A stretch of 64,000 nucleotides of DNA from Mizuhopecten yessoensis (taxonomy: Eukaryota): contig NW_018408916.1 of NCBI RefSeq assembly GCF_002113885.1, positions 912,957 to 976,956 on the forward strand. The letters are read 5' to 3'. The notes under the pieces are model-generated. The model was not told the DNA's origin. It saw nothing but the letters and a program-made list of their open reading frames with translations, and ran no database searches. Shown here one piece after another: positions 1-55,086 of the stretch (its first letter is position 1; each line of letters begins with the position of its first letter). A program made the translations under genes and the position numbers.

Positions 1-3000
1 CGAACATCATATATGTACACACAAAACGAACATCATACATGTACAACATACCATTCGAACATCATATATGTACACACAAAACGAACATCATACATGTACA
101 ACATACCATTCGAACATCATATATGTACACACAAACCGAACATCATACATGGACATATATTCGGAACATCATACATGCACATACAGTCCGAACATCATAC
201 ATGTACATATGTTCGGAACATCATACATGCACATACAGTCCGAACATCATACATGCACAACATACAGTCCCAACATCATACATGTACAATATACAATCCG
301 AACATCATACATGTACAATATACAATCCGAACATCATATATGTACACACAAACCGAACATCATACATGTACATATATTCGGAACATCATACATGCACATA
401 CAGTCCGAACATCATACATGTACATTTATTCGAAACATCATACATGCACATACAGTCCGAACATCATACATGCACAACATACAGCCCCAACATCATACAT
501 GTACAACATACAATCCGAACATCATACATGTACAATATGCAATCCGAATATCATACATATACACACAATCCGAACATCATACATGTACAATATACAATCC
601 GAACATCATACATGTACAACATACAATCCGAACATCATACATGTACATTCACTCCGAACATCATACATATACACGCAATCCGAAAATCATACATGTACAA
701 TATACAATTCGAACATCATACATGTACAACATACAATCCGAACATCATACATGTACAACATACAATCCGAACATCATACATGTACATACACTCGGAACAT
801 CATACATATACACACAATCCAAAAATCATACATGTACAATATACAATCCGAACATCATACATGTACAACATACAATCCGAACATCATATATGTACACACA
901 AAACGAACATCATACATGTACAACATACCATTCGAACATCATATATGTACACACAAAACGAACATCATACATGTACAACATACCATTCGAACATCATATA
1001 TGTACACACAAACCGAACATCATACATGGACATATATTCGGAACATCATACATGCACATACAGTCCGAACATCATACATGTACATATGTTCGGAACATCA
1101 TACATGCACATACAGTCCGAACATCATACATGCACAACATACAGTCCCAACATCATACATGTACAATATACAATCCGAACATCATACATGTACAATATAC
1201 AATCCGAACATCATATATGTACACACAAACCGAACATCATACATGTACATATATTCGGAACATCATACATGCACATACAGTCCGAACATCATACATGTAC
1301 ATATATTCGAAACATCATACATGCACATACAGTCCGAACATCATACATGCACAACATACAGCCCCAACATCATACATGTACAACATACAATCCGAACATC
1401 ATACATGTACAATATACAATCCGAACATCATACATGTACACACAAACCGAACATCATACATGTACATATATTCGGAACATCATACATGCACATACAGTCC
1501 GAACATCATACATGTACATATATTCGAAACATCATACATGCACATACAGTCCGAACATCATACATGCACAACATACAGCCCCAACATCATACATGTACAA
1601 CATACAATCCGAACATCATACATGTACAATATACAATCCGAACATCATACATATACACACAATCCGAACATCATACATGTACAATATACAATCCGAACAT
1701 CATACATGTACAACATACAATCCGAACATCATACATGTACATACACTCCGAACATCATACATGTACATATATTCGGAACATTATACATGCACATACAGTC
1801 CGAACATCATACATGCACAACATACAGCCCCAACATCATACATGTACAACATACAATCCGAACATCATACATGTACAATATACAATCCGAACATCATACA
1901 TATACACACAATCCGAACATCATACATGTACAATATACAATCCGAACATCATACATGTACAACATACAATCCGAACATCATACATGTACATACACTCCGA
2001 ACATCATACATGTACATATATTCGGAACATTATACATGCACATACAGTCCGAACATCATACATGCACAACATACAGCCCCAACATCATACATGTACAACA
2101 TACAATCCGAACATCATACATGTACAATATACAATCCGAACATCATACATATACACACAATCCGAACATCATACATGTACAATATACAATCCGAACATCA
2201 TACATGTACAACATACAATCCGAACATCATACATGTACATACACTCCGAACATCATACATGTACATATATTCGGAACATTATACATGCACATACAGTCCG
2301 AACATCATACATGCACAACATACAGCCCCAACATCATACATGTACAACATACAATCCGAACATCATACATGTACAATATACAATCCGAACATCATACATA
2401 TACACACAATCCGAACATCATACATGTACAATATACAATCCGAACATCATACATGTACAACATACAATCCGAACATCATACATGTACATACACTCCGAAC
2501 ATCATACATGTACATATATTCGGAACATTATACATGCACATACAGTCCGAACATCATACATGCACAACATACAGCCCCAACATCATACATGTACAACATA
2601 CAATCCGAACATCATACATGTACAATATACAATCCGAACATCATACATATACACACAATCCGAACATCATACATGTACAATATACAATCCGAACATCATA
2701 CATGTACAACATACAATCCGAACATCATACATGTACATACACTCCGAACATCATACATGTACATATATTCGGAACATTATACATGCACATACAGTCCGAA
2801 CATCATACATGCACAACATACAGCCCCAACATCATACATGTACAACATACAATCCGAACATCATACATGTACAATATACAATCCGAACATCATACATATA
2901 CACACAATCCGAACATCATACATGTACAATATACAATCCGAACATCATACATGTACAACATACAATCCGAACATCATACATGTACATACACTCCGAACAT

Positions 3001-4668
3001 CATACATGTACATATATTCGGAACATTATACATGCACATACAGTCCGAACATCATACATGCACAACATACAGCCCCAACATCATACATGTACAACATACA
3101 ATCCGAACATCATACATGTACAATATACAATCCGAACATCATACATATACACACAATCCGAACATCATACATGTACAATATACAATCCGAACATCATACA
3201 TGTACAACATACAATCCGAACATCATACATGTACATACACTCCGAACATCATACATGTACATATATTCGGAACATTATACATGCACATACAGTCCGAACA
3301 TCATACATGCACAACATACAGCCCCAACATCATACATGTACAACATACAATCCGAACATCATACATGTACAATATGCAATCCGAACATCATACATATACA
3401 CACAATCCGAACATCATACATGTACAATATACAATCCGAACATCATACATGTACAACATACAATCCGAACATCATACATGTACAACATACAATCCGAACA
3501 TCATACATGTACACACAAAACGAACATCATACATGTACAACATACCATTCGAACATCATATATGTACATACAAAACGAACATCATACATGTACAACATAC
3601 AATCCGAACATCATACATGTACACACAAAACGAACATCATACATGTACAACATACCATTCGAACATCATATATGTACACACAAAACGAACATCATACATG
3701 TACAACATACAATCCGAACATCATACATGTACACACAAAACGAACATCATACATGTACAACATACCATTCGAACATCATATATGTACACTCAATCCGAAC
3801 ATTATACATGTACCTATAATCTGAACGTCATATATGTACACCATACATGTACAACATGCAATCCGAACATCATACATGTACAACATGCAATCCGAACATC
3901 ATACATGTACAACATGCAATCCGAACATCATACATGTACAACATGCAATCCGAACATCATACATGTACAACATGCAATCCGAACATCATACATGTACAAC
4001 ATGCAATCCGAACATCATACATGTACAACATGCAATCCGAACATCATACATGTACAACATGCAATCCGAACATCATACATGTACAACATGCAATCCGAAC
4101 ATCATACATGTACAACATTCAGTCCGAACATCATACATGTACTTAAAGTCCGAACATCATACATGTACATACAGTCCAAACATCATACATGTACATGTAC
4201 CTAGAATCCGAACATCATACTACATAAAATCCGTACATCATACATGTACCCACACTCCGAACATCATAGATGTACAACATACAATCCGAACATCATACAT
4301 GTACAACATACAGTCCAAACATCATACATGTACACGTACAGTCCAAACATTATACATGTACTTAAAGTCCGAACATCATACATGTACATACAGTCCGAAC
4401 ATGTACATGTACCTAGAATCCGAACATCATACTACATACAATCCGAACTTCATACATGTACCCACACTCCGAACATCATAGATGTACAACATACAATCCG
4501 AACATCATATATGTACACTCAATCCGAACATTATACATGTACCTAGAATCTGAACGTCATATATGTACACCATACATGTACAACATACAATCTGAACATC
4601 ATACATGTACAACATACAGTCCAAACATCATACATGTACAACATACAGTCCGAACATCACACATGTAT
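1..4668 (+). repeat. Satellite array of 26/29-bp monomers (consensus ~CCGAACATCATACATGTAC[AAC]ATACAAT) with 249-bp higher-order repeat; runs off the left edge
   Basis: Continuous tandem repeat. The CAGCCCCAA variant recurs every 249 bp from 1576 to 3319 (5x29+4x26). Homogeneous 29-mers at ~3845-4110. Confidence 0.97.
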
Positions 4669-5777: not shown

Positions 5778-7603
5778 TCAGTTTACTATGTATGCATAAT
5801 AGAGTAGGAATCGCATCGTGTGTACAGTAATACCACTGTCGGATACCATAACGTGATGGCTTTAAGTATCCGATGGCGCCATTTTCTTATTACATGCAGA
5901 GCGGAAGTAAAACGGAAAGGTACATACATACAGCCCGAACATATATGTATGGTTTACATATATGACGTTCAGATTATAGGTACATGTATAATGTTCGGAT
6001 TGTGAATACATATATGATGTTCGAATGGTATGTTGTTCACGTGTCTGCGTTGATACATGCGTGAGTATGGAGGGTCGTTAGGGCTTGTCTTATCCCATTC
6101 AAAACGCACTGTCACATGGCATCAATAAAATTGTTGCTGATCGGAACTAAATTGTTCGAACACAATCATGTTTATTTTAAATCAACATTGATAACAAGCA
6201 AATATAATATATATTATATATTTGCCGTCATCAGTAGCTTTCACGATGAAATTTAGTCTTTTTCACATATTCCTAATAAATGATTTGTCGGGCGGTAAAT
6301 ATATTGAATTCAACAAGGAAAAGGACAATTTAAAAAAATAGTTTTAAAGGGAAATTGTTAACAAAGGGAAGGGTACATTGTTACGAGTTACCTCCCGTTG
6401 TGCGATAGAGGAACCTAATTATTCAGCTATCCATAAGGGAAACATATATTTTAATAAATATCAAAGAACATGAAAACCAAGACAACTTTTTCCTAAATCA
6501 GACTTAAGGAGGACAGTAGCCTGAAAATTATGATATGAATAATATTCTAAGAATTCCTGAATGTATACATGGATGGCAAGAAAACATATCCATAAATTTC
6601 CATGACTTTCTTCGCTCGGCTTTTTATAACAACACACACATATATACATTGTACGTAAGTTTTCTCAGCAAAGTACCTTTCATGATAATCTGACTACGTT
6701 ATCAACTCATTCTAATGGTGTATATGAAAGTTTGCAATGGAATATCGCATACATATTTGATATAGTTGTTATTCTTGAGACAGCTACGGATCGGACACTC
6801 GCTCTGAGAAATACAATGTATAACATATTTTGATGTAGTTTGAAATGTACGTACCAAAAGTACGATCATAATTATTTCATATCTAAAGCCAAGTTTGTTT
6901 TTGTAGAAATTGTTTTGTGAACCAATTCAAACAGAGCCAAGCATTCAGTCTGCACTGTATACGTCAAATAGCATGATTAATCACATAACGCAATAGATAT
7001 AAACTACGACTGAATACCAGGCGAAGGTACTCGATAAGCATTTTAGTGACCATTTGACATGTAATCAAACGTAATCGGTCTGTGACTTTGAAGTGTTGTT
7101 CCCACTTTGATTCAGAAATTATACTTGTAACGGTTATGGTGTTTTATATGGATCAATAACACCTTCTGCCCCTGAAACACACTATACCAGGCAGATGTAA
7201 TTAATAAACATTAAGTTTGTGATAATATTCAAGATACTTAATTGCAACCTCTAAGTCTTTCGCATCACTGTGAAAGTCGGGTTAATGTAAATTGTGTTTC
7301 AAACCTATTGTGATGCTCTGTTAAATTGTTAACGGGCCGTTCCATTTGTTGTCATCAGATGAATGGATTACCTGCCTAGCATTATAACTCTCCGCTATGA
7401 TACAGTATATAAACTTTATTAATCAAAATATCAGGATTGGTAAACGTAACATATCTTGCATCTCCACAGGTGTCTACAACCAAATCTTAGATGTAGTAAC
7501 ATGAAAAGTGTCTTATTTTCCTCTTATTTATGAGAGAAACAAACTTTACGTTCCATAAAAGTCATACCGATAATGTTTCGTTATTCTCATACTTGCAGAT
7601 ACA

Positions 7604-9628
7604 ATGGCGGAAGGTGGTCCCCATGCAGACCCTCCAGATACAATGGCGGAAGGTGGTCCCCATGCAGACCCTCAATCTGAAGACAACACACTACGCAACC
7701 TGTCGGATTCCCACCTTCTCAAATGTCCGATCTGTCTGGAGCAGTTACGACAGCCGAAGTCTCTGCCGTGTCGTCATTCTCTGTGTGAGGAATGTTTGAG
7801 TAGCTACATCGTCAGTGAGATGTCAGGGACGAGTGATACGGCGACTTCCTTTATCTGTCCGGTATGTAGGACCCTAACTCACCCCGTGGACAAATCAGAG
7901 GCAAAGGAGAAATGGGCCCAGCAGTTCCCGACCGACAACGTTGCCATAGAGATAATACAACTGAGAAACAGGACGACAGAGCCACGTTACTGCGCGCCCT
8001 GTCAGAGAAAGGGAAGCATGACCTCCGCACGATTCTGGTGTAAAATTACTCAGTCATTGTTCTGTGAGTCTTGTAAAGTGGATTTCCATGATGTGGTCCA
8101 TGTGAGCTGTGATATTGTAGATATGAGAGGTTCCGGAAATTTCTTGCTGAAACATGATACATCTGACAAAAGATGCGACAAACACAAGGATGAGATTGCT
8201 TATTATTGTGAGGATCACAAGTCCCTGGGTTGCAGTAAATGTATAACTGTTGGTCACAGGAAATGTGACAATGTGTCCACAACAGAGGATTACTGTGAGA
8301 AACTGAATAGTAGCTCCCAACTAGAGGAAAGAAAGACATTTCTACAGCAAGGAGCAGACGACATGGAATCTATGATAAAGGACTTTTATCGACGACAACA
8401 GAACATTGCAGACGACAAAGATGCGGTACTGAAAAGAATCGACGACCTGCAGGAACGTATGGATAAACGTATCAGAGAGATGAAGAGGGAAATCACAGAT
8501 GACGTAATCACGGCGTACAAACAAGAAAGAGAAAATCTGAAGGTGTCGACTCAGAAGTGTGAACGACTGATGGTCGCTATACAGAATACATTAGAATCGT
8601 CCACTACAGCTCTACAGAGGAACGACCATATGGACACGATCCGGCTTTACCAGAAAGGTCAGACGGAGCTCGAGGCTTGTAAGGATCTAGTGAAAGAAAT
8701 GCAGATGTCGATTTCAACTGTCAGTATTGAACATGAAATTGATTCGGACGTGACAAGTCTGAACTTTGGTAAAATCTTTGTTCGAAAGCAACAAAAACAT
8801 TTACCAGGTGTCCAAACTCTCGTCAAACCTTTATCCCAATGTAAAGTAAAGGAAATAAGAAAGATGAACATACAATGTCCGTCTGATCAATTTGAATGTG
8901 TTGCCCGTGGTGTTGTTTACTTTCCTGACGGCAGAATTGTGGTGGGAGATGAAAGCAATGAGAAGATCAAGTTAATAAACGACGCTGGGGATGTTGTGGA
9001 CGAGTTGAAATTGGATGGAAATCCTTGGGATCTGTGTATGGTGGATAACACCACTGTGGCGGCCGCTATAGAGAGGCCTGGAGGTATACGTGTAGTGACT
9101 GTCACACCCTCCAAACTTATACTGTCGTCTGTAATAAACACAAATACACGATATTACGGCATAACGTACAGAGATGATGAGTTTATCGTGACTACAGGAT
9201 CCGAAGTCTGTAGTGTTAAGAAAGACGGGACGACCAAGACGTTATATCGATATACTGACAGAGTATACGCGTTGTCACATGATTCCAAGGACGGACAGCT
9301 CTTTATCGCCCATAATACCTACAGAACTGGTAGTACAGCGATTGGTAGGTTGTCTACTGACAACAAGTACACGGACGTGTTGAAGTTTGGTGTAGTTAAG
9401 TGTCCGTATGGAGTGGACGTCGACGTGAAAGGTAACGTCTATGTCTGTGGTTGTACCTCCAACAACGTGGTACAGATGTCCGGGGACGGTACTAACGTCC
9501 GGGAACTGATAACGGCAGCGGACGGTATCACACTTCCACTAGCAATATCTGTTTGTGGTGATAAACTGGTGGTGACAAACAACTTGCATGGTCAGAGTAA
9601 TTTCATCCAAGTGTTTCAACTTGTATGA
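7604..9628 (+). CDS. TRIM-family E3 ligase (RING, two B-box-like domains, coiled coil, NHL-like beta-propeller), copy 1
   Basis: 674-aa ORF with RING CPIC..LPCRHSLCEEC..CPVC, B-boxes CAPC..C/CDKH..CEDH..CSKC..H, a helical region and repeated PxG/xVxD blades. Acceptor ttctcatacttgcAG at 7597-7598. Confidence 0.93.
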   Translation: MAEGGPHADPPDTMAEGGPHADPQSEDNTLRNLSDSHLLKCPICLEQLRQPKSLPCRHSLCEECLSSYIVSEMSGTSDTATSFICPVCRTLTHPVDKSEAKEKWAQQFPTDNVAIEIIQLRNRTTEPRYCAPCQRKGSMTSARFWCKITQSLFCESCKVDFHDVVHVSCDIVDMRGSGNFLLKHDTSDKRCDKHKDEIAYYCEDHKSLGCSKCITVGHRKCDNVSTTEDYCEKLNSSSQLEERKTFLQQGADDMESMIKDFYRRQQNIADDKDAVLKRIDDLQERMDKRIREMKREITDDVITAYKQERENLKVSTQKCERLMVAIQNTLESSTTALQRNDHMDTIRLYQKGQTELEACKDLVKEMQMSISTVSIEHEIDSDVTSLNFGKIFVRKQQKHLPGVQTLVKPLSQCKVKEIRKMNIQCPSDQFECVARGVVYFPDGRIVVGDESNEKIKLINDAGDVVDELKLDGNPWDLCMVDNTTVAAAIERPGGIRVVTVTPSKLILSSVINTNTRYYGITYRDDEFIVTTGSEVCSVKKDGTTKTLYRYTDRVYALSHDSKDGQLFIAHNTYRTGSTAIGRLSTDNKYTDVLKFGVVKCPYGVDVDVKGNVYVCGCTSNNVVQMSGDGTNVRELITAADGITLPLAISVCGDKLVVTNNLHGQSNFIQVFQLV

Positions 9629-10207
9629 TTGTAGACTCAGTTGTACACCAGATAGACAATTGTCATGACTTAATAGTCTATTCCTGATTTATTATTAACA
9701 AAACTTATTTAACGAACAGAAAATATCCTTTCTATCATAAATGAGAATGATGGGTAAATGTTTTTTGGAATAAGGAGAATATCTAACGATTATATTACAA
9801 ATAACAGGTAAGGAAAAATATGTTCTAGTTAACGTTCTAAATGAATTGTCAATTTCACATTTTAGTTTATGTTAACATTGTCGGACTAACAAGCGAAGCG
9901 GATTTTTTATCTTTTATACATACATGTATGTACTGTAATATATATATATATAATTATGTGATAAAGTCGCTAGCATTGATCTTGTTAGCACACCAAATGT
10001 CAACTTCTTTGTGAATTTAGGATCGTAGAGATGATTGCTAATTTACAACGTACAACTGAAGTGGAGACTTTTACTTTATCAAAGCAATGAGTCCCTTATG
10101 GGGAAATGAAGGAAAGGAAACCTTTGTTGAGATTGTTTCGAAAAAAATGGTTTTCTAAGTGGCAATCGTTTTGGAATCGAAATCGAATCGGAAAAAAAAA
10201 AAATACG

Positions 10208-10758
10208 TTTTAGCTCACCTGTCCAAGAGGCAAGTGAGCTTATGCCATGGCACAGCGTCCGTCGTCCGTCCGTACGTCAACTTCCCCCCCCCCCCTCCCC
10301 CGACTCCGCGGAGGTGCGTGGCCCAATAAGGGATATAGAAGAATGGCTTCAATATTCTTTTTTTAATTTTTAAATAAATGGTGGTTTTGAGCCCCCAGGG
10401 GCCGAGGGGTGGGGCTTAATAAGGAAAATAGAAAAATTAACTTTAAAATTCTTCTTCTTCTGTAGGAATGACAAGATTATGTCCATATTTGGTCTAAAGC
10501 ATCCTTGGATGAAGGGGATCTTATTTTGTATCAACGGTGGGTCTAACCCTCCTGGGGCAGAGGGGCGGGACCCAATAGAGGAAACATAGTAAATTCTTGA
10601 AATCCTCCTTTTCTTGTAGGTTGACAGGGTTTTGTCCAATTGCATATAAATATAATCCCTGACTAACCATGTAATGCATACAGTAACATCTGGCTATTCT
10701 TACTTCAATTTTGATAACATTTCCAGGTGAGCGATACAGGCCCTCTGAACCTCTTGTT
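10208..10758 (+). mobile_element. Non-autonomous Helentron-associated (HINE/CvA-pearl-like) element
   Basis: Starts TTTTAGCTCACCTG, has a GTCC microsatellite and ~160-bp internal repeats, ends CAGGTGAGCG...CCTCTTGTT (subterminal inverted repeat). Confidence 0.8.
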
Positions 10759-11364
10759 AAAGTCCACATGGTAGATTTTAGTTTTAACATCAAATTGTGA
10801 CTTCTTTATGCCCGACGGATGTTGACGGAAGAAGACGTATCGACATAGGCAATAAAATATTAAGATTAGCCACCAAGAACCTTGAATATTGTTTACCTAG
10901 CTGTAGCTGTTTTTGGTGATGAACTATTTATTCAGATATTAGAGTAATGCGACTACGAGAAAGTGGTGTTTTACTGTATAACATCAAAGCATATTAACTT
11001 TTTTATACTGGGCAGAATTCGCCAAGTCAAACTTTCGCCCTTCGCCGTGAATAATTAATGTGCATCCTATCTTGTTTACTAATGTTCGATGTAATGATAA
11101 ATTCGCCCTCGTTATGGAAAGCGATAATTTAACTGCAGCGAAATTTTGTTGGTAAACAGTTTTATATCCGATTGGATTCCGAAATATAATATAGATACAG
11201 ATATAGAACGCAGCCTAAGAGATGAGCGGAAGTCAATCTTGGTGTCCAGTGTAAACTGCCTCGATTTTTAAATATATAATTTGAGCTGGAAACACTCGAT
11301 TCTCAGACATGATAGACAACTCAAATCGACTTTTACATCTGCTTTCTTGAAAAGAAAATTATAA

Positions 11365-11512
11365 GACTTTTTCATGCCCAGCGGTGTAGAATAGGGAAAT
11401 TCCACCATAAGGGTTTTCAAATTTGATGAAAAGCCGAGGGTTTTGCCAGATTTAAAAATCCCGAGGGTACAATTTCCCTATCCTACACCCCTGGGCATGG
11501 AAGAGTATTTTA
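11365..11512. mobile_element. Long-hairpin end of a non-autonomous DNA element (Crypton-like, family inferred)
   Basis: Arms CATGCCCAGCGGTGTAGAATAGGGAAATT / AATTTCCCTATCCTACACCCCTGGGCATG with central GCCGAGG motif. Confidence 0.55.
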
Positions 11513-14500
11513 CTGACATTCAAACTATCAGAATAAGCTCAGAAATCATGAAAATGCGTTTGGACTGCCCACCATTTTGAAAATATCAATCCTCCAACCC
11601 CCATTAGCTTTGTAAAGCGGTAAAAGTGTGGATACACTTGTTCAGGGTAAAAGAAAGCTCTATTTTACACACACAGAAATGATAGAAATGTATTAACATA
11701 GAACATGCTATTTTCAAACTAAACATGCGTCCCGTTTCACTGCCTAAACTGAAAGTGAAATATGTGGTGATGTCACGTTCCTTGACCCCAACTGGAAGCG
11801 AAAGACACTTATGGTTTTCAAAACCGTGGCTCAAACCGGAAGTGGGTTCAAAGGTGATGTTCCTATATATGTTGTTCTTAAATTGGACTCCGACTGAAAT
11901 GGAATAAAAGGGTATGTTCATGACACGGTTCAAGTCGTAATTTAAATTAATGGTGATGTCCTTACCTTCATTCCAGCCAGATCTGAATTTAATACTGCTT
12001 ATGATGACATTAAGTCAGGCAGAAAATAATTTGAAGTAGTTTATCTAACACTATTTTAGTTTGGTTAGAGTGGACGATGTGCTTCTTGATTTGTTTCTAA
12101 AATTCATTCGCCGGCCACATTACCGGCTGTCAAACCAATCGAGCGCACTTGCTGATGTCAAATATAACTGCCACTTGGGGTACATTATCTTTGAATGCAT
12201 CAATTAAAGCTACTTTTACAACTAATCAGTCTCATATCAACAGTTTTATCTCACACTGGGGGAATCTTATCATTCATCCGCCATGTTTGCTGCTGTCTGC
12301 GCCAGTTACAGCAAGGCGGGCGATCCAGGGTCCACCGGGTGGCCCGCCCGAACAATATCTAAACCAATCGAGATAAATACCCGATAAGCCGGTACTGTCG
12401 GCTTACTCGCCGGTGGACGAATCGAGCAGCACCCCTGGCAGTGGTCTAAGTTGGATGTGAATTAAATCTTCCGGATGTTTCAGCTAAAGGCTTATTGAAT
12501 TGTCTCTTACCTGTCATCCAACTGAAAGAGAATTAAAAGTGGTTTGCGAACATCCCTTAAGTATACTTTCTACAGCCAGTAGCAAAGTAAATGGACGCAT
12601 GTCTGAACTTTGTTACGTCCAAGAGCGAAACGAAAATTAGTGTTCATGACCTCGGTGCCAGCCGGAAGTGAGTTGGAACGTGGTATCTTTGACCGTGAAC
12701 CTAAAATGAAATGAACTGAAGGTTAACATCTCTGACCATACTTTCATCCGGAAATGAACTCAAAAACAGTAACACTGACTTTGATGCTAGTGGGAAGTAG
12801 ACAGAATGGTGGTATTCCAGATCTTGCCACATGTATCAGCTGAACATTAACTGACGAGTGATATATTTTACCTTGTTGTTTATCGGCATTTAATGAACTG
12901 TGATGTATATGACTTTGTTGACAATCAGAATTGACCTGCAGACTTGTATCTGTTTCACAAAGGGGATGTATAAACAATATGACAAAAATTTGGGTGATTT
13001 TGAAATAACTTCTTATCGATACACTGCTGCTCCAATATCAACACAATTTGGAACTAACCTTAATTTCTTTCTGAGATAAAATAAGTTGTATCAACTCTTT
13101 TATCTCATAGAAGGTTCCCCTGTTTGCAATTGTGTATGTTATGTTTAATTTTGCCTTGTACAGAACGTACCTATTTACATGTACATAGCTAACCTCCGAG
13201 ACACATCCTGTTAAAGTGACAATACAGTTCCAGATGTTGTTATTCACTGACTTTACGATATACTTCCTTTTCATATTACTTATATATGCCCACCGGAAAT
13301 TACATCATGTTGATATTAAATACCTGTTATCCTGGATACATTCTGTAGATATTAATTTAATCAATTGACCTTTTTTTATTTATATCCACACATATTTAAA
13401 GCTCTGGGTTTATCTTTTGCAAAGCCGTTTCTTTGTTCATATCTCAATTCAAGTATATAATATTCAATATATTCACGTTAAATAATTTCGCTTTTAAGCC
13501 GGTCATTTTCCATTAAATATATGTTTTCAATGTTAGTTTAATACATGTGTAACGTTATTATTTGCAATTACAATACTGAAGTAAACGGATGAAGGTTTAG
13601 GGCCCGTATTCATTTAACCGTTCCCAAACACAGAATTTGTGCTTACGCCCATTTTCTTGTTCCAGTGATGAATTAATAATAATGTCACAATTTGTCAATA
13701 ATAGAGGATGATTTTGGCAAGACAAAACGCAAGTACCGTTTTCAACATTTACATGTTACATGATTAAAACGTATTACAAGAAATTTGGCTTGAGCACATA
13801 TCTCATCCCTGAGTATGAGAACGATTTCATGAATACGGGCCTAGGTCTTTCTGCATGGTATTTTGATTTACATTTGTACAAAAGTAAGTCGTCAATCGAA
13901 CTCATCGATTTCTATTATATAGATAGCATAAATAGTTTATTGTAAAGCTTTTTTTATTTGTTCCAAGCTTGATTGATATCAATCTTACAACATTCAGCGT
14001 TATTAAACATCAGTGATATGCGCAAAACACTTGAGTCCGGGCTGATGTAGTTTAAGCACAGCCTGGGTCTGTTTTTTTGTTTTGTTTTTGTTTTTTTGTT
14101 TTAAATTTAAATAACATTAATTTTAATTATACAATGAAGTACCTAGAAATAACCTATTCATGGTATTTCACATCTCAAACAATGCATAGCATGTGTACTT
14201 ATATAAAACTCGAGTTATCCGGATACATCATACCCGGTATTACGTCCTTGTTGTTAGTGGACCGGTCAACAACTTGGGAACATATTCCTACGACACTACA
14301 TGTTTTACCTGTAAATACTTGTCCACATTATATATTAACTGTTGTTTTAAGTTTATTTGAAATGTTTACTTTGTCATTAATATTTCCATTGCATTGAAAC
14401 CTGTTTATGATTAAAAAAAAATGTGGAACTACTTTGCACTGCGCCGAACGACAATACTACGATCGGAGTACTTTGGTTTTGACCTATATATAATCGATTT

Positions 14501-28642: not shown

Positions 28643-29517
28643 CTCGCATAACGACTATTAGCTGCCACTAGAAAAATAACGACGTGATTTACGATATGAA
28701 TACGATATCCCACTCCATATTTGATATTGTTTAATTCCGTAATACACGCTAAAGTTTGAAAAACTTTACTCCAGTTGAAAGATTACATAATTTTTACACA
28801 TATTTTATATGAATTTATTGATTGGAGAGGTTGAAATTTTCCGTCTGATTTTACTTTGATTTTGTATCACAATAGTGTACCAAAGTAAGTTATCTCACTA
28901 TTGATTGCATTATAATGATTTCCGTTAGATCTCAGAACCTATACTAACTGATGAACTGTAAAACATAAAGTAAAAAAACGGTTTCTGATTTCCTAGTGTA
29001 AAGTTAGACGGATATTTATTTCATAAAATTCAATGCGATGTTGTGTCAGTGATAAAAGCTCTAAAAATGTCATTGTACCGGGGTGTTTACATGTATGTCT
29101 TCAGTAACGTAAATTGTCAATAATAGTCACCTGTAAGGATGCTGTGTTAATTTGTTCTCTAGTAAATATCTTAAATGAAACAAGGTATGTGTAGTAAACA
29201 ATCGGTAAATTATCCGGATATATCGTACCCGACATTACAATGTACGGACGTGCTATTAGTGTATTGAGTCGCATTCCAAAGTGCGCCGAGCTACCAACGG
29301 GGACGTGTCCCACATCTACACCTCCTCATTTCAAAGACTACAACCATATTCATACATTGATGGAGCGGTAAGTACAAATAAGTATCTCCCGTACTGAGGT
29401 TTTATAACAGTACCACCTTTTACATCAAATGAACATGTAAATAGCGTGTTTTTACTAAGAACACGTTCATTTTAATCGTTGAATATGTTGAAGCGGCTGT
29501 AGTAATGTTAGACGTAC

Positions 29518-29547
29518 GGAAACCGAAAGAGGAAGTACAGGACGTCA
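29518..29547 (+). promoter_or_regulatory. ISRE/Ets module, TRIM copy 3
   Basis: GGAAACCGAAAGAGGAAGTACAGGACGTCA. Confidence 0.65.
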
Positions 29548-31407
29548 CCGATTTATTATCTATGCACAATAGAGTAGGAATCGCATTGGTTGTACAGTCA
29601 AAACACCGTCGGATACCATAATTTGAAGAATTTACGTATCCAACGGCGTCATTTTCTAATTACATACAGAGCGGAAGTAATAGTAAAATTGGGCAAACCC
29701 TCGTTCTATAAATAAATTGTTTTGGTATGGTTGACCGAGAAACGTGTTCATATACATGTGTATGCGTGGATACATGCGTGAGTATGAAGGGTCGTCAGGG
29801 CTTGCTTTTCCAATTCAAAATGCATTGTCAAAGGATTAAAAGTATTTAAATGATATGACCTGATCGGAACTCAATTGTTCGAACACACTCATGTTTATAC
29901 GGCGTTTACACAGGTAAAAAGCAAATGTAATGAATATTATATCTCTGCCAGTATTAATAGCTTTCACTTTGAAATTGACTCGTTTTCACATGTTCGTATT
30001 AAACGATTTGTCGGGCGGTAAATTCATATAATTTAAGAGGCAAATTAGACATACAAAAAGTTTGAAACATACATTTTAAGACATTTGAGGAACATAAAAA
30101 CCAACACAACTTTGTCCTAAATAAGACTGAGGACAGGAGTCCTGGTAAAACTATGTGTAGTAATCTTAGGGTTACTTAACATGTTTACTTTGTTGAAAAG
30201 AAAAAAAAATCCATGAATTTCCGTGGCTTTCTTAGCTCGTCTTTTTATAATAACACACCTACATATATACATTGAATATAAATTTTCTAGCAAATTTGTC
30301 GCTAATCTAAATAAGCTATCCACTCCCTCTATTGGGGAATATGTAAGTTTGCACAGATTCGTTTGAACGCATTACGATTGAAAGAAGATTACTTCGGAAA
30401 TATGTCCAAGTACTGATGACAAATATTAGGAGTAACAAGAAACACAGTTTTCATGTATACGTGTCTAAGTTGCACCTATATCGTACAACGGGAGGTAACT
30501 CATTACACATTATCCTTTCCTATTCGAAATGTAACATTCGTGTACATGTGTACACACTTATTACGTCGCCTATACAAATATCGAGTAAAAATATCGGATA
30601 CAAATTTGATATTGTTGTTATTATTGAGCTACCGATCAGACACTCGCTCTGGGAAATACAATGCATACAATATTTTGATGTAGTTTGAGGCGTACCAAAA
30701 GTACGATCATAATTCTTTCATATCTAAAGGCAAGTTTGTTTGTTGCAGACACTGTTTTGTGAACCAATCTAAACAGAGCCAAGCATTTAGTCTACACTGT
30801 ATAGGTCATATGCCGCAATGAATCACAAAACGCAATAGATGTAAACTACGAATGCGTGTACTATATGAGGCGAATGTACTGCATGTATTTATTATACGTA
30901 TTTGAAGAGTTTGTGCAATTTTGATTTAGAAAGATGGTGTATAGATCAGTAACATTTCGGTTGAAATTCACTATACCAGGCCAATGTAACTGATAAACTC
31001 GATGTTTATCATAATATTCAAGATGCTTGTAACCAATAAGCATTTTGCATCACTTAAAATTTGTTTCAAACCTATATTAATGCTATGTTAAACTGTTCAC
31101 GGAGCATTACGTCTTTCGGCATCAGGAAAATGGATTGCATGCCTAAGTTTTATTTCTCTACCAGGAAACAGTATATAAACGTTCACTAATCAAATTGTCT
31201 GGATTGGTTCACATGACATGTCGTAATTGTGTCTACAAAAAATTTCCTATGTAGTAACATGTACAATACCTTATTTCTATCTTACTTATGAAAAAAAATG
31301 AGTTGCAAGTACGCAAACTTTTCTTTATATACCAGCAAAGTCATGCCGATAATATTTCGTTATTCTCATACTTGCAGATACGGAACTAGCGTTTGAGTAC
31401 GTATACC

Positions 31408-33393
31408 ATGGCAGAAGGTGGTCCCCATGCAGACCCTCACTCTGAAGACGGCACACTACGAAACATCTCGGACTCCCAACTTCTCGAATGTCCAATCTGT
31501 CTTGAGCAGTTACGACAGCCGAAGTCTCTGCCGTGTCGTCATTCTCTTTGTGAGGAATGTTTGAGTAGCTACATCGTCAGTGAGGTGTTAGGGACGAGTG
31601 ATACGGCGACTTCCTTTATCTGTCCGGTATGTAGAACGTTAACTCACCCCGTGGACAAAACAGAGGACAAAGAGAAATGGGCCCGGCAGTTTCCGACCGA
31701 CACCGTTGCCATAGAGATGATACAACTGAGAAACAGGGCGACAGAGCCACGTTACTGCGCGCCCTGTCAGAGAAAGGGAAAGATGACCTCTGCACAATTC
31801 TGGTGTAAAATGAATCAGTCATTGTTCTGTGAGTCTTGTAAAGTGAATCACCATGATGTGGTCCATGTGAGCTGTGATATCGTAGATATAAGAGGTTCCG
31901 GGAATTTCCTGTTGAGACGGGAAACATCTGATAAAAGATGCGACAAACACAAGGATGAGATTGCTTATTATTGTGAGGATCACAAGTCATTGGGTTGCAG
32001 TAAATGTATCATTATTGGTCACAGGGAATGTGACAACGTTTCAACAACAGAGGGTTACTGTGAGAAACTTAATAGTAGCTCCCAACTAGAGGAAAGAAAG
32101 ACATTTCTACAGAAAGGAGCAGACGACATGGAATCCATGATAAAGGACTTTTATCTACGACAACAGAATATTGCAGACGACAAAGATGCGGTACTGAAAA
32201 GCATCGACGACCTGCAGGAACGTATGGAGAAGCGTATCAGAGAGATGAAGAAGGAAATCACAGATGACGTAATCACGGCGTACAAACAGGAAAGAGAAAA
32301 TCTGAAGGTGTCCACACAGAAGTGTGAACGACTGAAGGTCGCTATACAGAATACATTAGAATCGTCCGCTACAGCTCTACAGAGGAACGACCATATGGAC
32401 ACGATCCGGCTTTACCAGAAAGGTCAGACGGAGCTCGAGGCTTGTAAAGATCTAGTGAAAGAAATGCAGATGTCGATTTCAACTGTCAGTATTAAACATG
32501 AAATCGATTTGGACGTGGCAGGTCTGAACTTTGGTAAAGTCGTTGTCAGGAAGCAACGAAGAGATTTACCAGGTGTCCCAACTGTCGTCAAACCCTTATT
32601 CAAATGTGAAGTAAAGGAAATAAGAAAGGTGAACATAAAATGTCCGTCTGATCAATCTGCTTGTAATTCTCGTGGTGTTGTTTACTTTCCTGACGGCGGA
32701 ATTGTAGTGGGAGATAACAACAATCAGAAGATCAAGTTAATAAACGATGAGGGGGATGTTGTGGACGAGTTAAACTTGGATGGACGTCCTTGGGATCTGT
32801 GTATGGTGGATAACACCACTGTGGCGGCCGCTATAGAGAGCCCTGGAGGTATACATGTAGTGACTGTCACACCCTCCAAACTTACACTGTCGTCTGTTAT
32901 AAACAAAAATAAACAGTATTACGGGATAACGTACAGAGATGGTGAGTTTATCGTGAGTACGGGATCCGAAGTCTGTAGCGTAAAGAAAGACGGGACGACC
33001 AAGGCGTTATATCGATATACTGGCGAAGTACTCATGTTGTCACATGATTCCAAGGACGGACAGCTCTTTGTCTCACATTTCAACTCCAGGACTGATAGTA
33101 CGGTGATTGGTAAGTTGTCTACTGACAACAAGTACACGGACGTGTTGAAGGTTGGTGTAGTTAAGAGTACGTATGGAGTGGACGTCGACATGGAAGGTAA
33201 CGTCTATGTCTGTGGTTTTTTCTCCAACAACGTGGTACAGATGTCCGGGGATGGGACTAACGTCCGGGAACTGTTAACGGCAGAGGACGGTATCATACGC
33301 CCACTAGCAATATCTGTTTGTGGTGATAAACTGGTGGTGACAAATTGCGCATCAGGACTGAGGAATTCCATCAAAGTCTTTCAACTCTTTTGA
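31408..33393 (+). CDS. TRIM-family E3 ligase (RING/B-box/coiled-coil/NHL-like propeller), copy 3
   Basis: Intact ORF from ACCATGG at 31408 (661 aa), same architecture as copy 1; acceptor just upstream. Confidence 0.93.
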   Translation: MAEGGPHADPHSEDGTLRNISDSQLLECPICLEQLRQPKSLPCRHSLCEECLSSYIVSEVLGTSDTATSFICPVCRTLTHPVDKTEDKEKWARQFPTDTVAIEMIQLRNRATEPRYCAPCQRKGKMTSAQFWCKMNQSLFCESCKVNHHDVVHVSCDIVDIRGSGNFLLRRETSDKRCDKHKDEIAYYCEDHKSLGCSKCIIIGHRECDNVSTTEGYCEKLNSSSQLEERKTFLQKGADDMESMIKDFYLRQQNIADDKDAVLKSIDDLQERMEKRIREMKKEITDDVITAYKQERENLKVSTQKCERLKVAIQNTLESSATALQRNDHMDTIRLYQKGQTELEACKDLVKEMQMSISTVSIKHEIDLDVAGLNFGKVVVRKQRRDLPGVPTVVKPLFKCEVKEIRKVNIKCPSDQSACNSRGVVYFPDGGIVVGDNNNQKIKLINDEGDVVDELNLDGRPWDLCMVDNTTVAAAIESPGGIHVVTVTPSKLTLSSVINKNKQYYGITYRDGEFIVSTGSEVCSVKKDGTTKALYRYTGEVLMLSHDSKDGQLFVSHFNSRTDSTVIGKLSTDNKYTDVLKVGVVKSTYGVDVDMEGNVYVCGFFSNNVVQMSGDGTNVRELLTAEDGIIRPLAISVCGDKLVVTNCASGLRNSIKVFQLF

Positions 33394-38815: not shown

Positions 38816-39717
38816 AAAAGTGCATAAGACATATTTGACGATAAGTCTAATTACATACTGTGGTCAAACGGCACTGTATAGGTTCCGGAAATAGCGATCG
38901 CTTAAACGAGGCAGATTATTGAAGATCACAGCATGCTTGTGATCATAGACATGTTTATGGTATACTATCATCATTACGAAGGTGGGTACAAATCAATTAG
39001 TGTATTATAGATCAACCTTGTTATAAACTTGAAATATCCCAGAAATGAAACTTAAAAGCACATTAAAATATAACGAATCAGTGAGTTTATCACGGCCCGA
39101 AGTCGACAATCTCACAGATTATGTCAATAATTAACTCACAGATCTCCTTTGACACATGGTTTATGTATTTTTTCATTATTCAATGATTTATAAATTCAAA
39201 ACACACATTAACGAAAATATTTGTGTTTTTAAACATAATATAAACAATGATTGTAAATAACACCTATGGACATGCTACTGTATGGATAATAGCGACCAGA
39301 CTGTAGGTTAATAGCGATTACGGCTTTATATTACTGTATGGTTTATTGGATTATTACATTTTGTCTGTTGGTGGGAAAAACACTTTCTCTCACACAGATG
39401 GATAATTTCGAGTTCAGTTACTGCCAAAAGAGCTTTACAGAGTTTAGTGAAATAATTGAACATTGTAATGCAAGACCACGGAACTTAGGAAGAACGGTTA
39501 AATAAACGAAGAATTTTCTTAAACGTTGTAGTATCCCCGCGGTTCAGAGTAATAGCGGGGATTATTTGTCTCGTGCGGCACTCGTTTGCTAGTTGGAGCA
39601 CGAGCGGCGAGTGCTGTCACGCGTCCACGGGACAGGTGAGCACGGGGCCTATAGTATAGGGTCATTTCTAGTCGCCTATTCGGGACGCGCGGTTCACATC
39701 AAACTTTGACTACGAGC

Positions 39718-50302: not shown

Positions 50303-50335
50303 TTAGGACTGTGCCTGTCGGCCAAGACACAGTCC
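50293..50335 (+). promoter_or_regulatory. -1 programmed ribosomal frameshift signal
   Basis: T TTA AAC in the gag frame just before the stop, 6-nt spacer, stem GGACTGTG/CACAGTCC; pol is in the -1 frame. Confidence 0.88.
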
Positions 50336-53300: not shown

Positions 53301-54346
53301 GTCACAACTCTACGTATGCTGCTCATCCGGGTGTTCAACGTACAATGGAGAAACTACGGGAAATTTTTTATTGGTACAAGATGATCAATGATGTCAAGAC
53401 CCATGTGCATTTATGCGAAAACTGTAATCGATGGAAATCGACAGTACCAACATCCAAAGCTACGCCCAGTGACCACAGAGTGGGATATCCTTTGGATAGA
53501 GTTGGCATCGACGTGATCGGACCACTCCCTCGGACAAAGAATCAGAATCAATATATCCTAGTAATTGGAGATCATTTCACAAGATGGATGGAAGCGTATC
53601 CTCTTCCTAACCAATCAGCTGAAAAAGTCGCGGAGAAGTTGGTAAAAGAATTCATAGCCAGATTCGAGATTCCTTTAGAAATTCATTCGGACCAAGGTAC
53701 CAATTTTGAAAGTCAGATCTTTCAGGAAGTGTGCAAACTCCTTCAAATTACAAAGACCAGGACCACCCCCTATCATCCTGAATCAAACGGATTGATCGAA
53801 CGGTTTAATAAAACGTTGGGAACTATGATCAAGTGCTTCCTGAAAGAGAATCCTAAGGAATGGGACCGTCACTTGGAAATACTTATGGCAGCATATAGAA
53901 GTACAAAGCATTCTGCAACTGGATTCAGCCCCAACGTTATGATGTTTGGACGTGAAGTGAATACACCAATAAACATTTTGTTTCCGACAGAGGGATCAAC
54001 GGAATTCACATCTACCGAATACGTGGGAAGATTACGCGAGACCTTGGAGACCATGTACAACACGGCTAGAAATAAATTAGGGGAAAAAGCGAGTTACACA
54101 AAAAGAAACAGTGATACCCGTATTCATGATAAACCATACAATATAGGGGAATTTGTGTATAAATTAAAGCCGAAACATAGAAAACTGGAGTCACCATGGT
54201 CAGGACCGTACATCGTCACCAAAGTATTGAGTGATGTCGTTTACGAGATCACCCATAGTAAACATAAAGAGATTGTACATTTTAATAAATTAAAGACCTG
54301 TACAATGTTAGAAAGTCCAAAATGGGCCAAAACCTATATGCTATGA
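50293..54346 (+). pseudogene. pol: Gypsy Pol (protease, RT, RNase H, integrase) with one frameshift at ~52489
   Basis: VDTGAE; MPFGL, YLDD; RNaseH D[T]DAS broken by an apparent 2-bp deletion; integrase H..H..CxxC, D..D..E and WSGPY. Confidence 0.92.
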
Positions 54347-54369
54347 TCTTTTGTTTTTACAGGTTAACG

Positions 54370-55086
54370 ATGAGCTTTCAATGTAGTATTTGTGAAGGCA
54401 AATATAAAGGAAAGAAGAGTGCCATAGTACATTTCTTGTCACAGCACAAACCTATTGAGAGTGCCCCATTTAGTTGTACCCTTTGTGGGTATAGATCCCT
54501 AACCTCTGCTTCTTTGAAAGCTCACACCAAAGGATATCGACCACATTGGGAAAAAAGACAGATAACCAGTTTAAATGATCTGGATTGCTTTCAAAGAAGC
54601 CTAAGACCGTATTCAGTGACTTTTGGAGTCGGAAATGAAGATATGTGTTATATAAAGGAAGATCTGGAAGTGAGGAAGGAAGAAAGATTGACAGAGATTA
54701 AGGAAAATATGGAAGCGAAGAATGAAGAAAGAGCGACAGAGATCAAGGAAGATATGGAAGTGAGGAAGGAAGAAAGAGCGACAGAGACCAAGGAAGACCT
54801 GGATGGACTGTTACATGATGTCCTGGAATTGTGTGAGGACGAGACAGAGAGGTTCAAGAAGGAAAAGGAAGCGGAAGCGGAAGTGGACAGGATCCGGAAA
54901 GAGATAGTTTAGTGCGAAAAGAAAAGAGCGACAGAGAGTGCGAAGTTTGGAAAGTATGTAGAGAGATTAGAGAAGAAGTTAGATGAGTGTAGAGGGCGTA
55001 AGAGAGATTATGGAAGTTCATACGGTTTTGAGGAGATGTGGGAGGAATATGGGAATGAAAGTAAGAGACTTAAGAGTGTGGTGTGA
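54370..55086 (+). CDS. Extra ORF3 of the Gypsy element: two C2H2-type fingers plus charged coiled coil; in-frame TAG at 54910
   Basis: Acceptor ttttgtttttacAG at 54362; CSIC..H..H and CTLC..H..H; EERxTEIKEDMEVRK-like repeat x3; frame stays open ~57 codons beyond the TAG. Confidence 0.7.

What the first reader, a model, noticed from the sequence alone, without database searches (positions are those of the whole stretch)
7604..33393. TRIM paralogs diversify in clusters on the beta-propeller loops: candidate variable immune-sensor array
Seen: the RING and much of the coiled coil are nearly identical across copies, but dense replacements recur in short patches, about once per blade. Copy1/2/3: QFECVAR/QLYCFAR/QSACNSR; DESNE/DGNNN/DNNNQ; TRYY/KQCY/KQYY; DRVYA/GRVLA/GEVLM; AHNTYRTG/SHHTVTTG/SHFNSRTD; KCPY/QYAC/KSTY; CTS/FIS/FFS; TLPL/TTPR/IRPL; NLHGQSNF/QSGQS/CASGLRNS. 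The intervening strands are conserved. Established: NHL propellers bind ligands on the top face, and antiviral TRIMs such as TRIM5 evolve fast in C-terminal recognition loops. Inference: a constant E3 effector joined to a variable recognition surface under diversifying selection.
Basis: partly seen in the sequence, partly recalled or inferred. Interest (0 to 1): 0.85.

Follow-up and report, generated by a model that had tools for sequence, protein, structure and literature searches.

The report
Scallop TRIM-NHL genes with hypervariable propeller face
Three tandem scallop genes encode E3 ubiquitin ligases whose enzyme part is conserved, while the loops on one face of their C-terminal propeller are under strong diversifying selection, the evolutionary signature of a receptor repertoire chasing fast-changing targets.

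Summary
The window (Mizuhopecten yessoensis, judged from protein names) carries three tandem RING–B-box–coiled-coil–NHL genes. Each has a single coding exon. Copy 2 has one in-frame TAG.

- **Family size:** the three genes belong to a young subfamily of at least 13 members (82–88% identity), inside an expansion with about 600 first-look candidates.
- **Selection test:** codon site models on 13 sequences give, for the NHL domain, M1a/M2a 2ΔlnL=155, M7/M8 171 and M8a/M8 148. About 8% of sites have ω≈6.5. The RBCC half gives only 6.5.
- **Robustness:** the signal survives wrong trees, a star tree and per-segment trees. It repeats in a second subfamily 45% identical to the first (LRT 67.5 for NHL, 0 for RBCC).
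- **Not hypermutation:** synonymous diversity is not raised next to the selected sites.
- **Location:** On an AlphaFold model (pLDDT 95, six blades) all 14 sit in or beside D–A and B–C loops, the "top" ligand-binding face. None sit in bottom loops (P≈8e-6).
- **Composition:** selected sites are rich in Tyr, Phe and Arg, and almost every paralog carries a unique loop combination.

An immune or antiviral role is inferred, not shown. I rate this a new variant of a known kind: a finTRIM/TRIM5-like design with NHL in place of B30.2. An earlier scan note (s1-504991) flags a similar array elsewhere in this genome.

The parts
7604..9628 (+). TRIM-NHL copy 1 (674 aa from the first ATG). It has a 13-aa N-terminal duplication, and a second ATG at 7643 matches the start of the other paralogs. 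The ORF is intact.
   Evidence: ORF and translation; Pfam RING, B-box and NHL; same as L008 in the own-genome search.
7724..7873 (+). C3HC4 RING finger of copy 1 (residues 41-90). All zinc ligands are conserved in every full-length paralog.
   Evidence: Pfam PF13445/PF00097; sequence matches to TRIM2, TRIM56 and TRIM5 RING structures; alignment.
8846..9625 (+). Six-bladed NHL beta-propeller of copy 1 (about residues 415-674). The 14 positively selected codons start at 8891, 8900, 8951, 9071, 9260, 9320, 9401, 9452, 9455, 9533, 9539, 9581, 9596 and 9602.
   Evidence: AlphaFold2 model with pLDDT 95.2 and 24 strands; Foldseek hits to TRIM2, Thin, TRIM71 and Brat NHL domains at TM 0.74-0.78; site posteriors; loop assignment.
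21756..23732 (+). TRIM-NHL copy 2, full length apart from one in-frame stop.
   Evidence: Read-through translation; same as L007 with '1 TAG'.
22149..22151 (+). In-frame TAG in copy 2, at the position of a conserved Trp (TGG) in B-box 1. It marks either a recent pseudogene or a null allele.
31408..33393 (+). TRIM-NHL copy 3 (661 aa), intact.
   Evidence: Contigs from RNA-like runs cover only the CDS and about 0.7 kb of 3' flank.
7584..7598 (+). Conserved splice-acceptor-like motif TTCTCATACTTGCAG just upstream of the copy 1 ATG. Identical copies lie at 21711-21725 and 31363-31377. It implies a 5'-UTR intron and a single coding exon.
   Evidence: Three exact matches against 0 expected; conserved across 10 paralogs. 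The splice itself was not observed (no joints).
1..4664 (.). Minisatellite of 26-29 nt units (CGAACATCATACATGTACA...). It lies 3-4 kb upstream of copy 1, with shorter arrays at 18292-18930 and 28468-28633 upstream of copies 2 and 3. It is part of the duplicated unit.
   Evidence: TRF; self-BLAST of the three units.

Best explanation
The region is a tandem array of lineage-specific TRIM-NHL genes of the Yesso scallop. Their order is RING, two B-boxes, coiled coil and a six-bladed NHL propeller, with no filamin domain, so they resemble TRIM32 in architecture. They have no signal peptide and are therefore presumably cytosolic. Shown here: the RBCC half evolves under purifying selection. About 8% of NHL codons evolve at omega of roughly 6.5. 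All of these codons lie on the D-A and B-C loops that form the top face, which is the face NHL propellers use to bind ligands. These positions are enriched in Tyr, Phe and Arg. Nearly every paralog carries a unique combination of loop variants. Recombination or gene conversion among paralogs reshuffles segments. A second, 45%-identical subfamily shows the same pattern. Inferred: each paralog is an E3 ligase whose propeller face recognises a different ligand or ligand variant, and binding leads to ubiquitination of the ligand or to signalling. The family would then act as a germline-encoded repertoire against fast-evolving targets, most plausibly viral or other parasite-derived proteins or RNAs. 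This is analogous to TRIM5alpha and the fish finTRIM/btr/trim35 families, with NHL replacing B30.2. Confidence by part: about 0.9 for the structural and evolutionary part (diversifying selection on the top face of a TRIM-NHL array), and about 0.5 for the immune or anti-parasite function.
For: - **Architecture:** Pfam RING, B-box and NHL hits. Sequence matches to the TRIM2/3/5/56 RINGs, the KAP1 RBCC and the TRIM72 B-box-CC. AlphaFold2 model with pLDDT 95.2 and 24 strands. Foldseek hits to TRIM2, Thin, TRIM71 and Brat NHL domains.
- **Family:** 69 scored matches and 606 first-look candidates in the same genome. At least 13 members share 82-88% identity, in two clusters. Protein names identify Mizuhopecten yessoensis, and relatives were found only in Pectinidae.
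- **Selection:** my M0 likelihood reproduces IQ-TREE's exactly (-4051.53). For the NHL domain, M1a/M2a LRT is 155 with omega2=6.6 and p2=0.077. M7/M8 is 170.7 and M8a/M8 is 147.8. The RBCC control gives 6.5.
- **Robustness:** LRT is 171-236 on wrong or star trees, 168 without the outgroups, and 23, 23 and 123 for three segments each on its own tree.
- **Replication:** the second subfamily gives NHL LRT 67.5 and RBCC LRT 0.0. Several selected positions coincide with the first subfamily: 430, 433, 617 and 646 exactly, and 661 next to 660.
- **No local hypermutation:** synonymous diversity in amino-acid-invariant codons is 0.071-0.081 near selected sites and 0.068 far from them (p=0.72).
- **One face:** 14 of 14 selected sites fall in or beside odd-numbered (D-A, B-C) loops and none in even loops (hypergeometric 8e-6, Fisher 3e-4). 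The face definition and the ligand-binding role of the top surface come from PMC4015489. Across 56 family members, entropy is 2.30 bits in top loops and 1.72 bits in bottom loops (p=9e-4).
- **Composition:** aromatic residues make up 23% of selected sites against 7.5% elsewhere, and Arg 10.6% against 3.4%. There are 8-11 distinct variants per patch among 11 paralogs.
- **Transcription:** RNA-like contig runs cover only the CDS and 3' flank, and one true RNA run gives a few CDS-only reads.
- **Context:** many TRIM2/3-like genes in oysters respond to OsHV-1 or Perkinsus (PMC9892467, PMC9437489).
Against: - No functional data exist for ligand, E3 activity or induction by infection.
- Recombination among paralogs is real: in the PHI-like test, 0 of 1000 permutations reached the observed value. 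Recombination can inflate site-model LRTs.
- The site models are my own implementation, with branch lengths fixed up to one scale factor and NEB rather than BEB posteriors.
- Many codon pairs at selected sites differ at 2-3 positions, so multi-nucleotide changes may inflate omega.
- Expression evidence is thin. The true RNA run gave only 16 reads, all 95-99% alike, so they may come from alleles or close paralogs.
- Copy 2 carries a stop codon.
- The net charge of the top face is near neutral and variable (-3 to +5). It gives no positive support for RNA binding and says nothing about ligand class.
Confidence: 0.65

Rival explanations
1. The same diversifying selection occurs, but for a non-immune purpose. 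The variable face would recognise endogenous or intragenomic targets, for example transposon products or RNAs (the array sits among DIRS and Gypsy elements), self/non-self or gamete-recognition factors, or a diversified set of cellular substrates or mRNAs, as with Brat and LIN-41.
For: Canonical TRIM-NHL proteins are developmental RNA regulators that bind RNA on the top face (PMC4015489). Tyr, Phe and Arg enrichment would suit RNA as well as protein. Retroelements flank the array. Nothing here ties the genes to infection.
Against: Omega of about 6.5 repeated at homologous positions in two subfamilies, together with hundreds of copies, is typical of an arms race rather than housekeeping substrate recognition. 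The top face is not consistently electropositive. Oyster TRIM2/3-like genes track infection phenotypes.
Confidence: 0.25
2. The loops are simply unconstrained (omega about 1) in redundant young duplicates drifting towards pseudogenes. On this view the patches reflect relaxed constraint, not positive selection.
For: Copy 2 has a premature stop. Several family members carry stops. Pooled NG86 pN/pS at patch sites is only 1.2-1.4.
Against: Models that allow a neutral class are rejected decisively (M1a vs M2a LRT 155; M8a vs M8 147.8). Ten of the 11 close paralogs keep intact 660-aa ORFs. Strands and bottom loops stay under strong constraint (omega0 about 0.1). Patch pN (0.36-0.48 among the three window copies) exceeds the noncoding divergence of the duplicated upstream DNA, which is 75-86% identical.
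Confidence: 0.03
3. The signal is an artefact of gene conversion, mosaicism or alignment. Short tracts imported from divergent paralogs, or mis-aligned indel-bearing loops, would mimic excess nonsynonymous change on a single assumed tree.
For: Recombination is detected. Trees are star-like and poorly supported. Some loop cassettes are shared between otherwise different paralogs, for example HHTVTTG and YAC in copy 2 and L009. The last patch contains 1-2 residue indels.
Against: The LRT stays at or above 23 in each of three short segments with their own trees, and is higher still on star or wrong trees. The RBCC half of the same recombining genes shows almost no signal. Synonymous diversity is not raised beside selected sites, as it would be if divergent tracts had been imported. 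Nine of the ten patches are gap-free.
Confidence: 0.05

Closest known systems
Teleost multigene TRIMs (finTRIM/ftr, btr, trim35/hltr) and primate TRIM5alpha
   Same: They are RBCC E3 ligases in tandem, lineage-specific multigene arrays. The RBCC part is conserved, and a C-terminal recognition domain has solvent-exposed loops with site-specific positive selection under M2a/M8 (PMC3137616).
   Different: The recognition domain here is a six-bladed NHL beta-propeller, not a B30.2/PRY-SPRY sandwich. The host is a bivalve mollusc. No antiviral activity or interferon-like induction is known for these genes.
Canonical TRIM-NHL proteins (TRIM32/Thin, TRIM2, TRIM3, TRIM71/LIN-41, Brat, Mei-P26)
   Same: They share the RING-B-box-coiled-coil-NHL order and the six-bladed propeller fold (TM 0.74-0.78), and they bind ligands on the top face formed by the B-C and D-A loops. 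Like TRIM32, these genes lack a filamin domain. From memory, not tested here: vertebrate TRIM32 also has a single coding exon.
   Different: The canonical members are few per genome (3-5), highly conserved and act as developmental RNA regulators with an electropositive top face. Here there are hundreds of copies, sequence identity to solved NHL domains is only 13-20%, the top face is hypervariable and near neutral in charge, and there is no one-to-one orthology outside scallops (closest non-Mizuhopecten hit 63% identical).
Expanded 'TRIM2/3-like' gene sets reported in oysters
   Same: They are large bivalve TRIM repertoires annotated as TRIM2/3/45/71-like. Their expression or allele frequency is associated with OsHV-1 or Perkinsus outcomes (PMC9892467, PMC9437489).
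   Different: Those reports are at the level of expression or association. I found no paper describing site-specific positive selection on the NHL propeller face, though the held library is incomplete.

Membership tests
TRIM / RBCC E3 ligases | N-terminal C3HC4 RING finger with intact zinc ligands | tested here: met
   PF13445 at 35.5 bits (cut-off 25.2) and PF00097 at 33.4 bits (cut-off 21). Matches to the TRIM2, TRIM56 and TRIM5 RING structures. The Cys and His ligands are invariant in the alignment.
TRIM / RBCC E3 ligases | One or two B-box zinc fingers after the RING | tested here: inconclusive
   PF00643 scores 24.0 bits in copy 2 against a cut-off of 24.1, and 19.6 and 19.0 bits in copies 1 and 3. 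phmmer aligns residues 27-287 to the KAP1 RBCC and 176-243 to the TRIM72 B-box-CC. A second Cys/His-rich B-box1-like stretch is visible by eye.
TRIM / RBCC E3 ligases | Coiled coil following the B-boxes | tested here: inconclusive
   No coiled-coil predictor or full-length model was run. The roughly 160-residue charged, heptad-like segment aligns with the KAP1 RBCC and is under purifying selection.
TRIM-NHL (class VII) | C-terminal six-bladed NHL beta-propeller | tested here: met
   AlphaFold2 model with pLDDT 95.2 and 24 strands. Top Foldseek hits are the TRIM2, Thin, TRIM71 and Brat NHL domains, E about 1e-12. PF01436 scores 30 bits in copy 2.
TRIM-NHL (class VII) | Filamin/Ig domain between the coiled coil and NHL (present in TRIM2/3/71, absent in TRIM32) | tested here: not met
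   No Pfam filamin hit. Only about 30-40 residues separate the coiled coil from the first propeller strand. The architecture is therefore TRIM32-like.
TRIM-NHL (class VII) | Electropositive, RNA-binding top surface | tested here: inconclusive
   A crude count of charged residues in top-face loops gives net -3 to +5 among paralogs, while the bottom face is -3 to -8. No electrostatics on coordinates and no RNA-binding assay were possible.
Diversifying multigene 'immune' TRIMs (TRIM5alpha / finTRIM type) | Lineage-specific tandem multigene expansion | tested here: met
   Three copies in the window. At least 13 members at 82-88% identity in two clusters. There are 606 first-look candidates genome-wide, and the closest hits in other scallop genera are only 61-63% identical.
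Diversifying multigene 'immune' TRIMs (TRIM5alpha / finTRIM type) | Site-specific positive selection on exposed loops of the C-terminal recognition domain | tested here: met
Diversifying multigene 'immune' TRIMs (TRIM5alpha / finTRIM type) | B30.2 (PRY-SPRY) recognition domain | tested here: not met
   The C-terminal domain is an NHL propeller, and there is no SPRY hit. These genes work like this group but are not members of it.
Diversifying multigene 'immune' TRIMs (TRIM5alpha / finTRIM type) | Induction by infection, or direct restriction or sensing of a pathogen | not testable with these tools
   There is only weak evidence of transcription, plus indirect oyster literature.

The most novel reading that the evidence does not exclude
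Bivalves possess a germline-encoded, hypervariable intracellular receptor repertoire built on the top face of an NHL beta-propeller fused to a TRIM E3 ligase. Hundreds of genes would be diversified by positive selection and by shuffling of loop cassettes between paralogs, and would act as pathogen-specific restriction or sensing factors. This would be an NHL-based counterpart of TRIM5/finTRIM and, conceptually, of plant NLR or lamprey VLR diversity.
Probability: 0.4. Interest if true: 0.8.

Novelty: new variant of a known kind. Interest (0 to 1): 0.62.

Why it matters
Bivalves lack adaptive immunity, suffer mass mortalities from viruses and protists, and are known for huge expansions of innate-immune genes. 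What their hundreds of "TRIM2/3-like" genes actually do is unknown. This analysis shows that selection acts specifically on the ligand-binding face of the NHL propeller while the ligase module stays constant. That turns a vague annotation into a testable model: a constant effector joined to a variable recognition surface. It names the exact residues to swap or mutate. It also extends the TRIM5/finTRIM principle to a different recognition fold and a different phylum. Because these genes may affect disease resistance, they are candidates for study in scallop and oyster aquaculture.

Tried and rejected
- **Single-sequence AlphaFold2** of the propeller gave a useless model (pLDDT 46.6). The run with a 56-sequence alignment was used instead.
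- **IQ-TREE codon trees** with bootstraps are star-like, with support mostly below 75. I did not rely on topology and tested alternative, star and per-segment trees instead.
- **A first batch run of all site models timed out**. It was rerun in pieces.
- **MAFFT p-distances of flanks across 10 paralogs** (0.25-0.32, range up to 0.57) are unreliable as a neutral yardstick, because some flanks are not homologous. I used BLAST HSPs among the three window copies instead.
- **Micro-conversion from divergent donors or local hypermutation** was considered as the source of the patches. It was rejected because synonymous diversity beside the patches is not raised.
- **Conservation of the RBCC half by gene conversion** was rejected because dS is the same in both halves.
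- **Eight literature searches** found no description of NHL-loop positive selection in molluscan TRIMs. PMC8382680 and PMC4346834 do not mention TRIMs at all.
- **Read laying** showed no splice joint within 3 kb upstream of copy 3 and too few true RNA reads to define transcript ends.
- **Sequences with gaps:** L012 and L019 (broken by N or a frameshift) were left out. N stretches in L011 and L014 were treated as missing data and not filled.

Full report
**What is there.**

The window is G000:C5589:912957-976956, from a genome of about 988 Mb in 82,659 contigs. Names attached to near-identical database proteins identify the organism as the Yesso scallop, Mizuhopecten yessoensis.

Between 7.6 and 33.4 kb lie three same-strand ORFs of about 660-674 codons:
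- **Copy 1:** 7604-9628. It has a 13-residue N-terminal duplication, and the ATG at 7643 matches the start used by the other paralogs.
- **Copy 2:** 21756-23732, interrupted by one in-frame TAG at 22149-22151 where all other copies have Trp.
- **Copy 3:** 31408-33393.

The TTG starts in the ORF list are artefacts of the bacterial start-codon rule. All paralogs begin at MAEGG or MADGG.

Pfam finds a C3HC4 RING, a borderline B-box and NHL repeats. phmmer against PDB sequences aligns the RING to TRIM2/3/5/56, residues 27-287 to the KAP1 RBCC, and the B-box-CC to TRIM72. There is no filamin domain and no signal peptide.

An exact 15-nt splice-acceptor-like motif (TTCTCATACTTGCAG) sits 5-30 nt upstream of each ATG (3 matches against 0 expected). 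It is conserved in 10 paralogs. The coding sequence is therefore probably a single exon behind a 5'-UTR intron. The splice itself was not observed.

**The duplicated unit.**

Self-BLAST shows that homology between copies runs from about 4 kb upstream to just past the stop codon. The upstream part includes a 26-29-nt minisatellite. Upstream noncoding identity is 75-86%.

**Family context.**

The same genome gives 69 scored matches and 606 first-look candidates. A young subfamily at 82-88% identity comprises six genes on this contig, including one only 7 kb beyond the window end, and seven on contig C2985. The nearest proteins from other scallop genera (Pecten, Argopecten, Ylistrum) are only 61-63% identical. 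The subfamily therefore expanded, or was homogenised, within the Mizuhopecten lineage.

**Checking the observation.**

With 11 close paralogs the pattern becomes sharper. There are ten short hypervariable patches in the C-terminal 250 residues, each with 8-11 distinct variants among the 11 genes, separated by almost invariant strands.

Nei-Gojobori estimates give the following:
- RBCC: dN 0.056, dS 0.159, omega 0.35.
- NHL: dN 0.096, dS 0.133, omega 0.72.

Because dS is equal in the two halves, the N-terminal conservation reflects purifying selection and not local gene conversion.

This gave pN/pS of 1.25-1.44, against 0.55 for the rest of the NHL domain and 0.38 for RBCC.

**Formal test.**

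PAML and HyPhy were not available, so I wrote a Goldman-Yang F3x4 site-model likelihood. The topology is fixed and branch lengths come from IQ-TREE up to one scale factor. Its M0 likelihood reproduces IQ-TREE's to 0.002 lnL units (-4051.527 against -4051.526).

For the NHL domain (254 codons, 13 sequences):
- M1a -3924.87 against M2a -3847.34 gives 2ΔlnL=155 (p=2e-34), with 7.7% of sites at omega=6.6.
- M7 against M8 gives 170.7, and M8a against M8 gives 147.8, with omega_s=6.3 and p_s=0.086.

The RBCC half of the same genes gives only 6.5 (p=0.04).

Fourteen sites have posterior >0.95 under both M2a and M8.

**Robustness.**

A PHI-like compatibility test shows that recombination or gene conversion is present. 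Incompatibility is 0.42 within 100 nt against 0.54 after permutation, and 0 of 1000 permutations reached the observed value. The trees are star-like. Recombination can inflate such tests, so I repeated the M1a/M2a test in several ways:
- NHL data on the RBCC tree: LRT 203.
- NHL data on the full-length tree: LRT 171.
- NHL data on a star tree: LRT 236.
- Without the outgroups: LRT 168.
- Three segments of about 85 codons, each on its own tree: LRT 23, 23 and 123, all with p<=1.2e-5.

The RBCC half recombines just as much but shows almost no signal, so it serves as an internal control.

Synonymous diversity in amino-acid-invariant codons is 0.071-0.081 within 5 codons of a selected site and 0.068 further away (p=0.72). 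The patches are therefore not mutation hot spots or tracts imported from divergent donors.

**Replication.**

A second subfamily (10 genes, 61-95% identical to each other, 45% to the first) gives NHL LRT 67.5 (p=2e-15; 7.3% of sites at omega 4.3) and RBCC LRT 0.0. Its selected positions, in copy 1 numbering, are 430, 433, 475, 556, 602, 617, 646 and 661. Four of these coincide exactly with the first set and one is adjacent.

**Where the sites are.**

AlphaFold2 with a 56-sequence alignment gives a confident model (pLDDT 95.2, pTM 0.92) with 24 strands, that is six four-stranded blades. Foldseek's best matches are the NHL domains of TRIM2, Thin (fly TRIM32), TRIM71 and Brat, at TM 0.74-0.78.

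Coordinates are not returned by the tool, so I used topology. In a four-stranded antiparallel blade, successive loops alternate between the two faces. All 14 sites with posterior >0.95, and all 19 with posterior >0.5, lie in or within two residues of odd-numbered loops, which are the D-A and B-C loops. None lie in A-B or C-D loops (hypergeometric P=8e-6; odd against even loops, Fisher P=3e-4).

By the definition used for Brat-NHL, the B-C and D-A loops form the top surface, and that surface binds RNA and Pumilio (PMC4015489). Across 56 scallop family members, column entropy is 2.30 bits in top loops, 1.72 in bottom loops and 1.43 in strands (p=9e-4).

Selected positions are enriched in aromatic residues (23% against 7.5%) and Arg (10.6% against 3.4%). 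The summed charge of top-face loops varies from -3 to +5 between paralogs, while the bottom face is always negative.

**Expression.**

One RNA raw-read run gave 16 reads, all inside the copy 3 CDS and all 95-99% alike. They could come from alleles or close paralogs. Two runs guessed to be RNA cover only the CDS, and one of them also covers about 0.7 kb of 3' flank. Neither covers any of the 3 kb upstream. A DNA-like run covers everything. This suggests transcription but is weak evidence.

**Interpretation.**

Shown here: these are tandem, young TRIM32-like TRIM-NHL genes with a constrained ligase and scaffold module. One propeller face, the one NHL domains use for ligands, is under strong and repeated diversifying selection, with nearly unique loop combinations in each gene and with exchange between paralogs.

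Inferred: each protein couples recognition of a different, rapidly changing ligand to ubiquitination, and the family forms a recognition repertoire against pathogens or other genetic parasites.

The closest known systems are the fish ftr, btr and trim35 families and primate TRIM5alpha, where B30.2 loops show the same signature (PMC3137616). These scallop genes work like that group but are not members of it, because the recognition fold differs.

Oyster studies report many TRIM2/3-like genes linked to OsHV-1 or Perkinsus outcomes (PMC9437489, PMC9892467). I found no paper describing selection on the NHL face. The library searched is incomplete, so the novelty claim is provisional.

I did not examine that piece, but the second-subfamily result is in line with it.

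**Caveats.**
- The likelihood code is my own, with NEB posteriors and scaled fixed branch lengths.
- Recombination among paralogs is present.
- Codons at selected sites often differ at two or three positions, so omega may be over-estimated.
- The face assignment uses loop parity on a predicted structure.
- Some "paralogs" could be haplotigs.
- No functional evidence exists.

Noticed in passing
window 1-4664; also 18292-18930 and 28468-28633: A strongly strand-skewed minisatellite of 26-29 nt units (CGAACATCATACATGTACAACATACAATC; about 140 copies at the window start, with a 249-nt higher-order period) recurs 3-4 kb upstream of each TRIM copy. It is part of the duplicated unit and could be a substrate for unequal crossing-over. 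It also creates long spurious ORFs (13-4204).
   Followed up: partly
window 39706-41958: A 750-aa ORF with a CCHC zinc knuckle and a reverse transcriptase domain (retroelement). An earlier first-reader note (s1-510945) calls it DIRS-like.
   Followed up: no
window 48494-54912: A run of long same-strand ORFs (602, 752, 609 and 196 aa) typical of an LTR retrotransposon. Earlier first-reader notes (s1-510916, s1-510901) describe it as a Gypsy element with LTR stem-loops and an extra zinc-finger ORF. Not examined here.
   Followed up: no
window 26951-27195: A 20-nt tandem repeat (ACGTTTACCTCACAGGGGAG, about 12 copies) between copies 2 and 3. It gives repetitive ORFs.
   Followed up: no
window 8000-8200 (B-box 1 region of copy 1; alignment columns 134-194): Paralogs fall into two haplotype-like classes across B-box 1. 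L006, L009, L010 and L011 share RRKGT..VPAQ..DLHDNIHVGC..NWQLRQNTS, against the form seen in the window copies. This is a block pattern that suggests gene conversion or an old recombination breakpoint.
   Followed up: partly
G000:C5589:984318-986306 (about 7 kb beyond the window end) and C5589:807245-809233: Further intact members of the same subfamily lie on the same contig, so the local array extends beyond the window. A second cluster of seven lies on C2985:611-728 kb.
   Followed up: partly
L028 and L029 (C1248 and C76580): Two loci on different contigs encode 100% identical proteins, and neighbouring genes match in order. These are probably haplotigs or an assembly duplication rather than true paralogs.
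   Followed up: no
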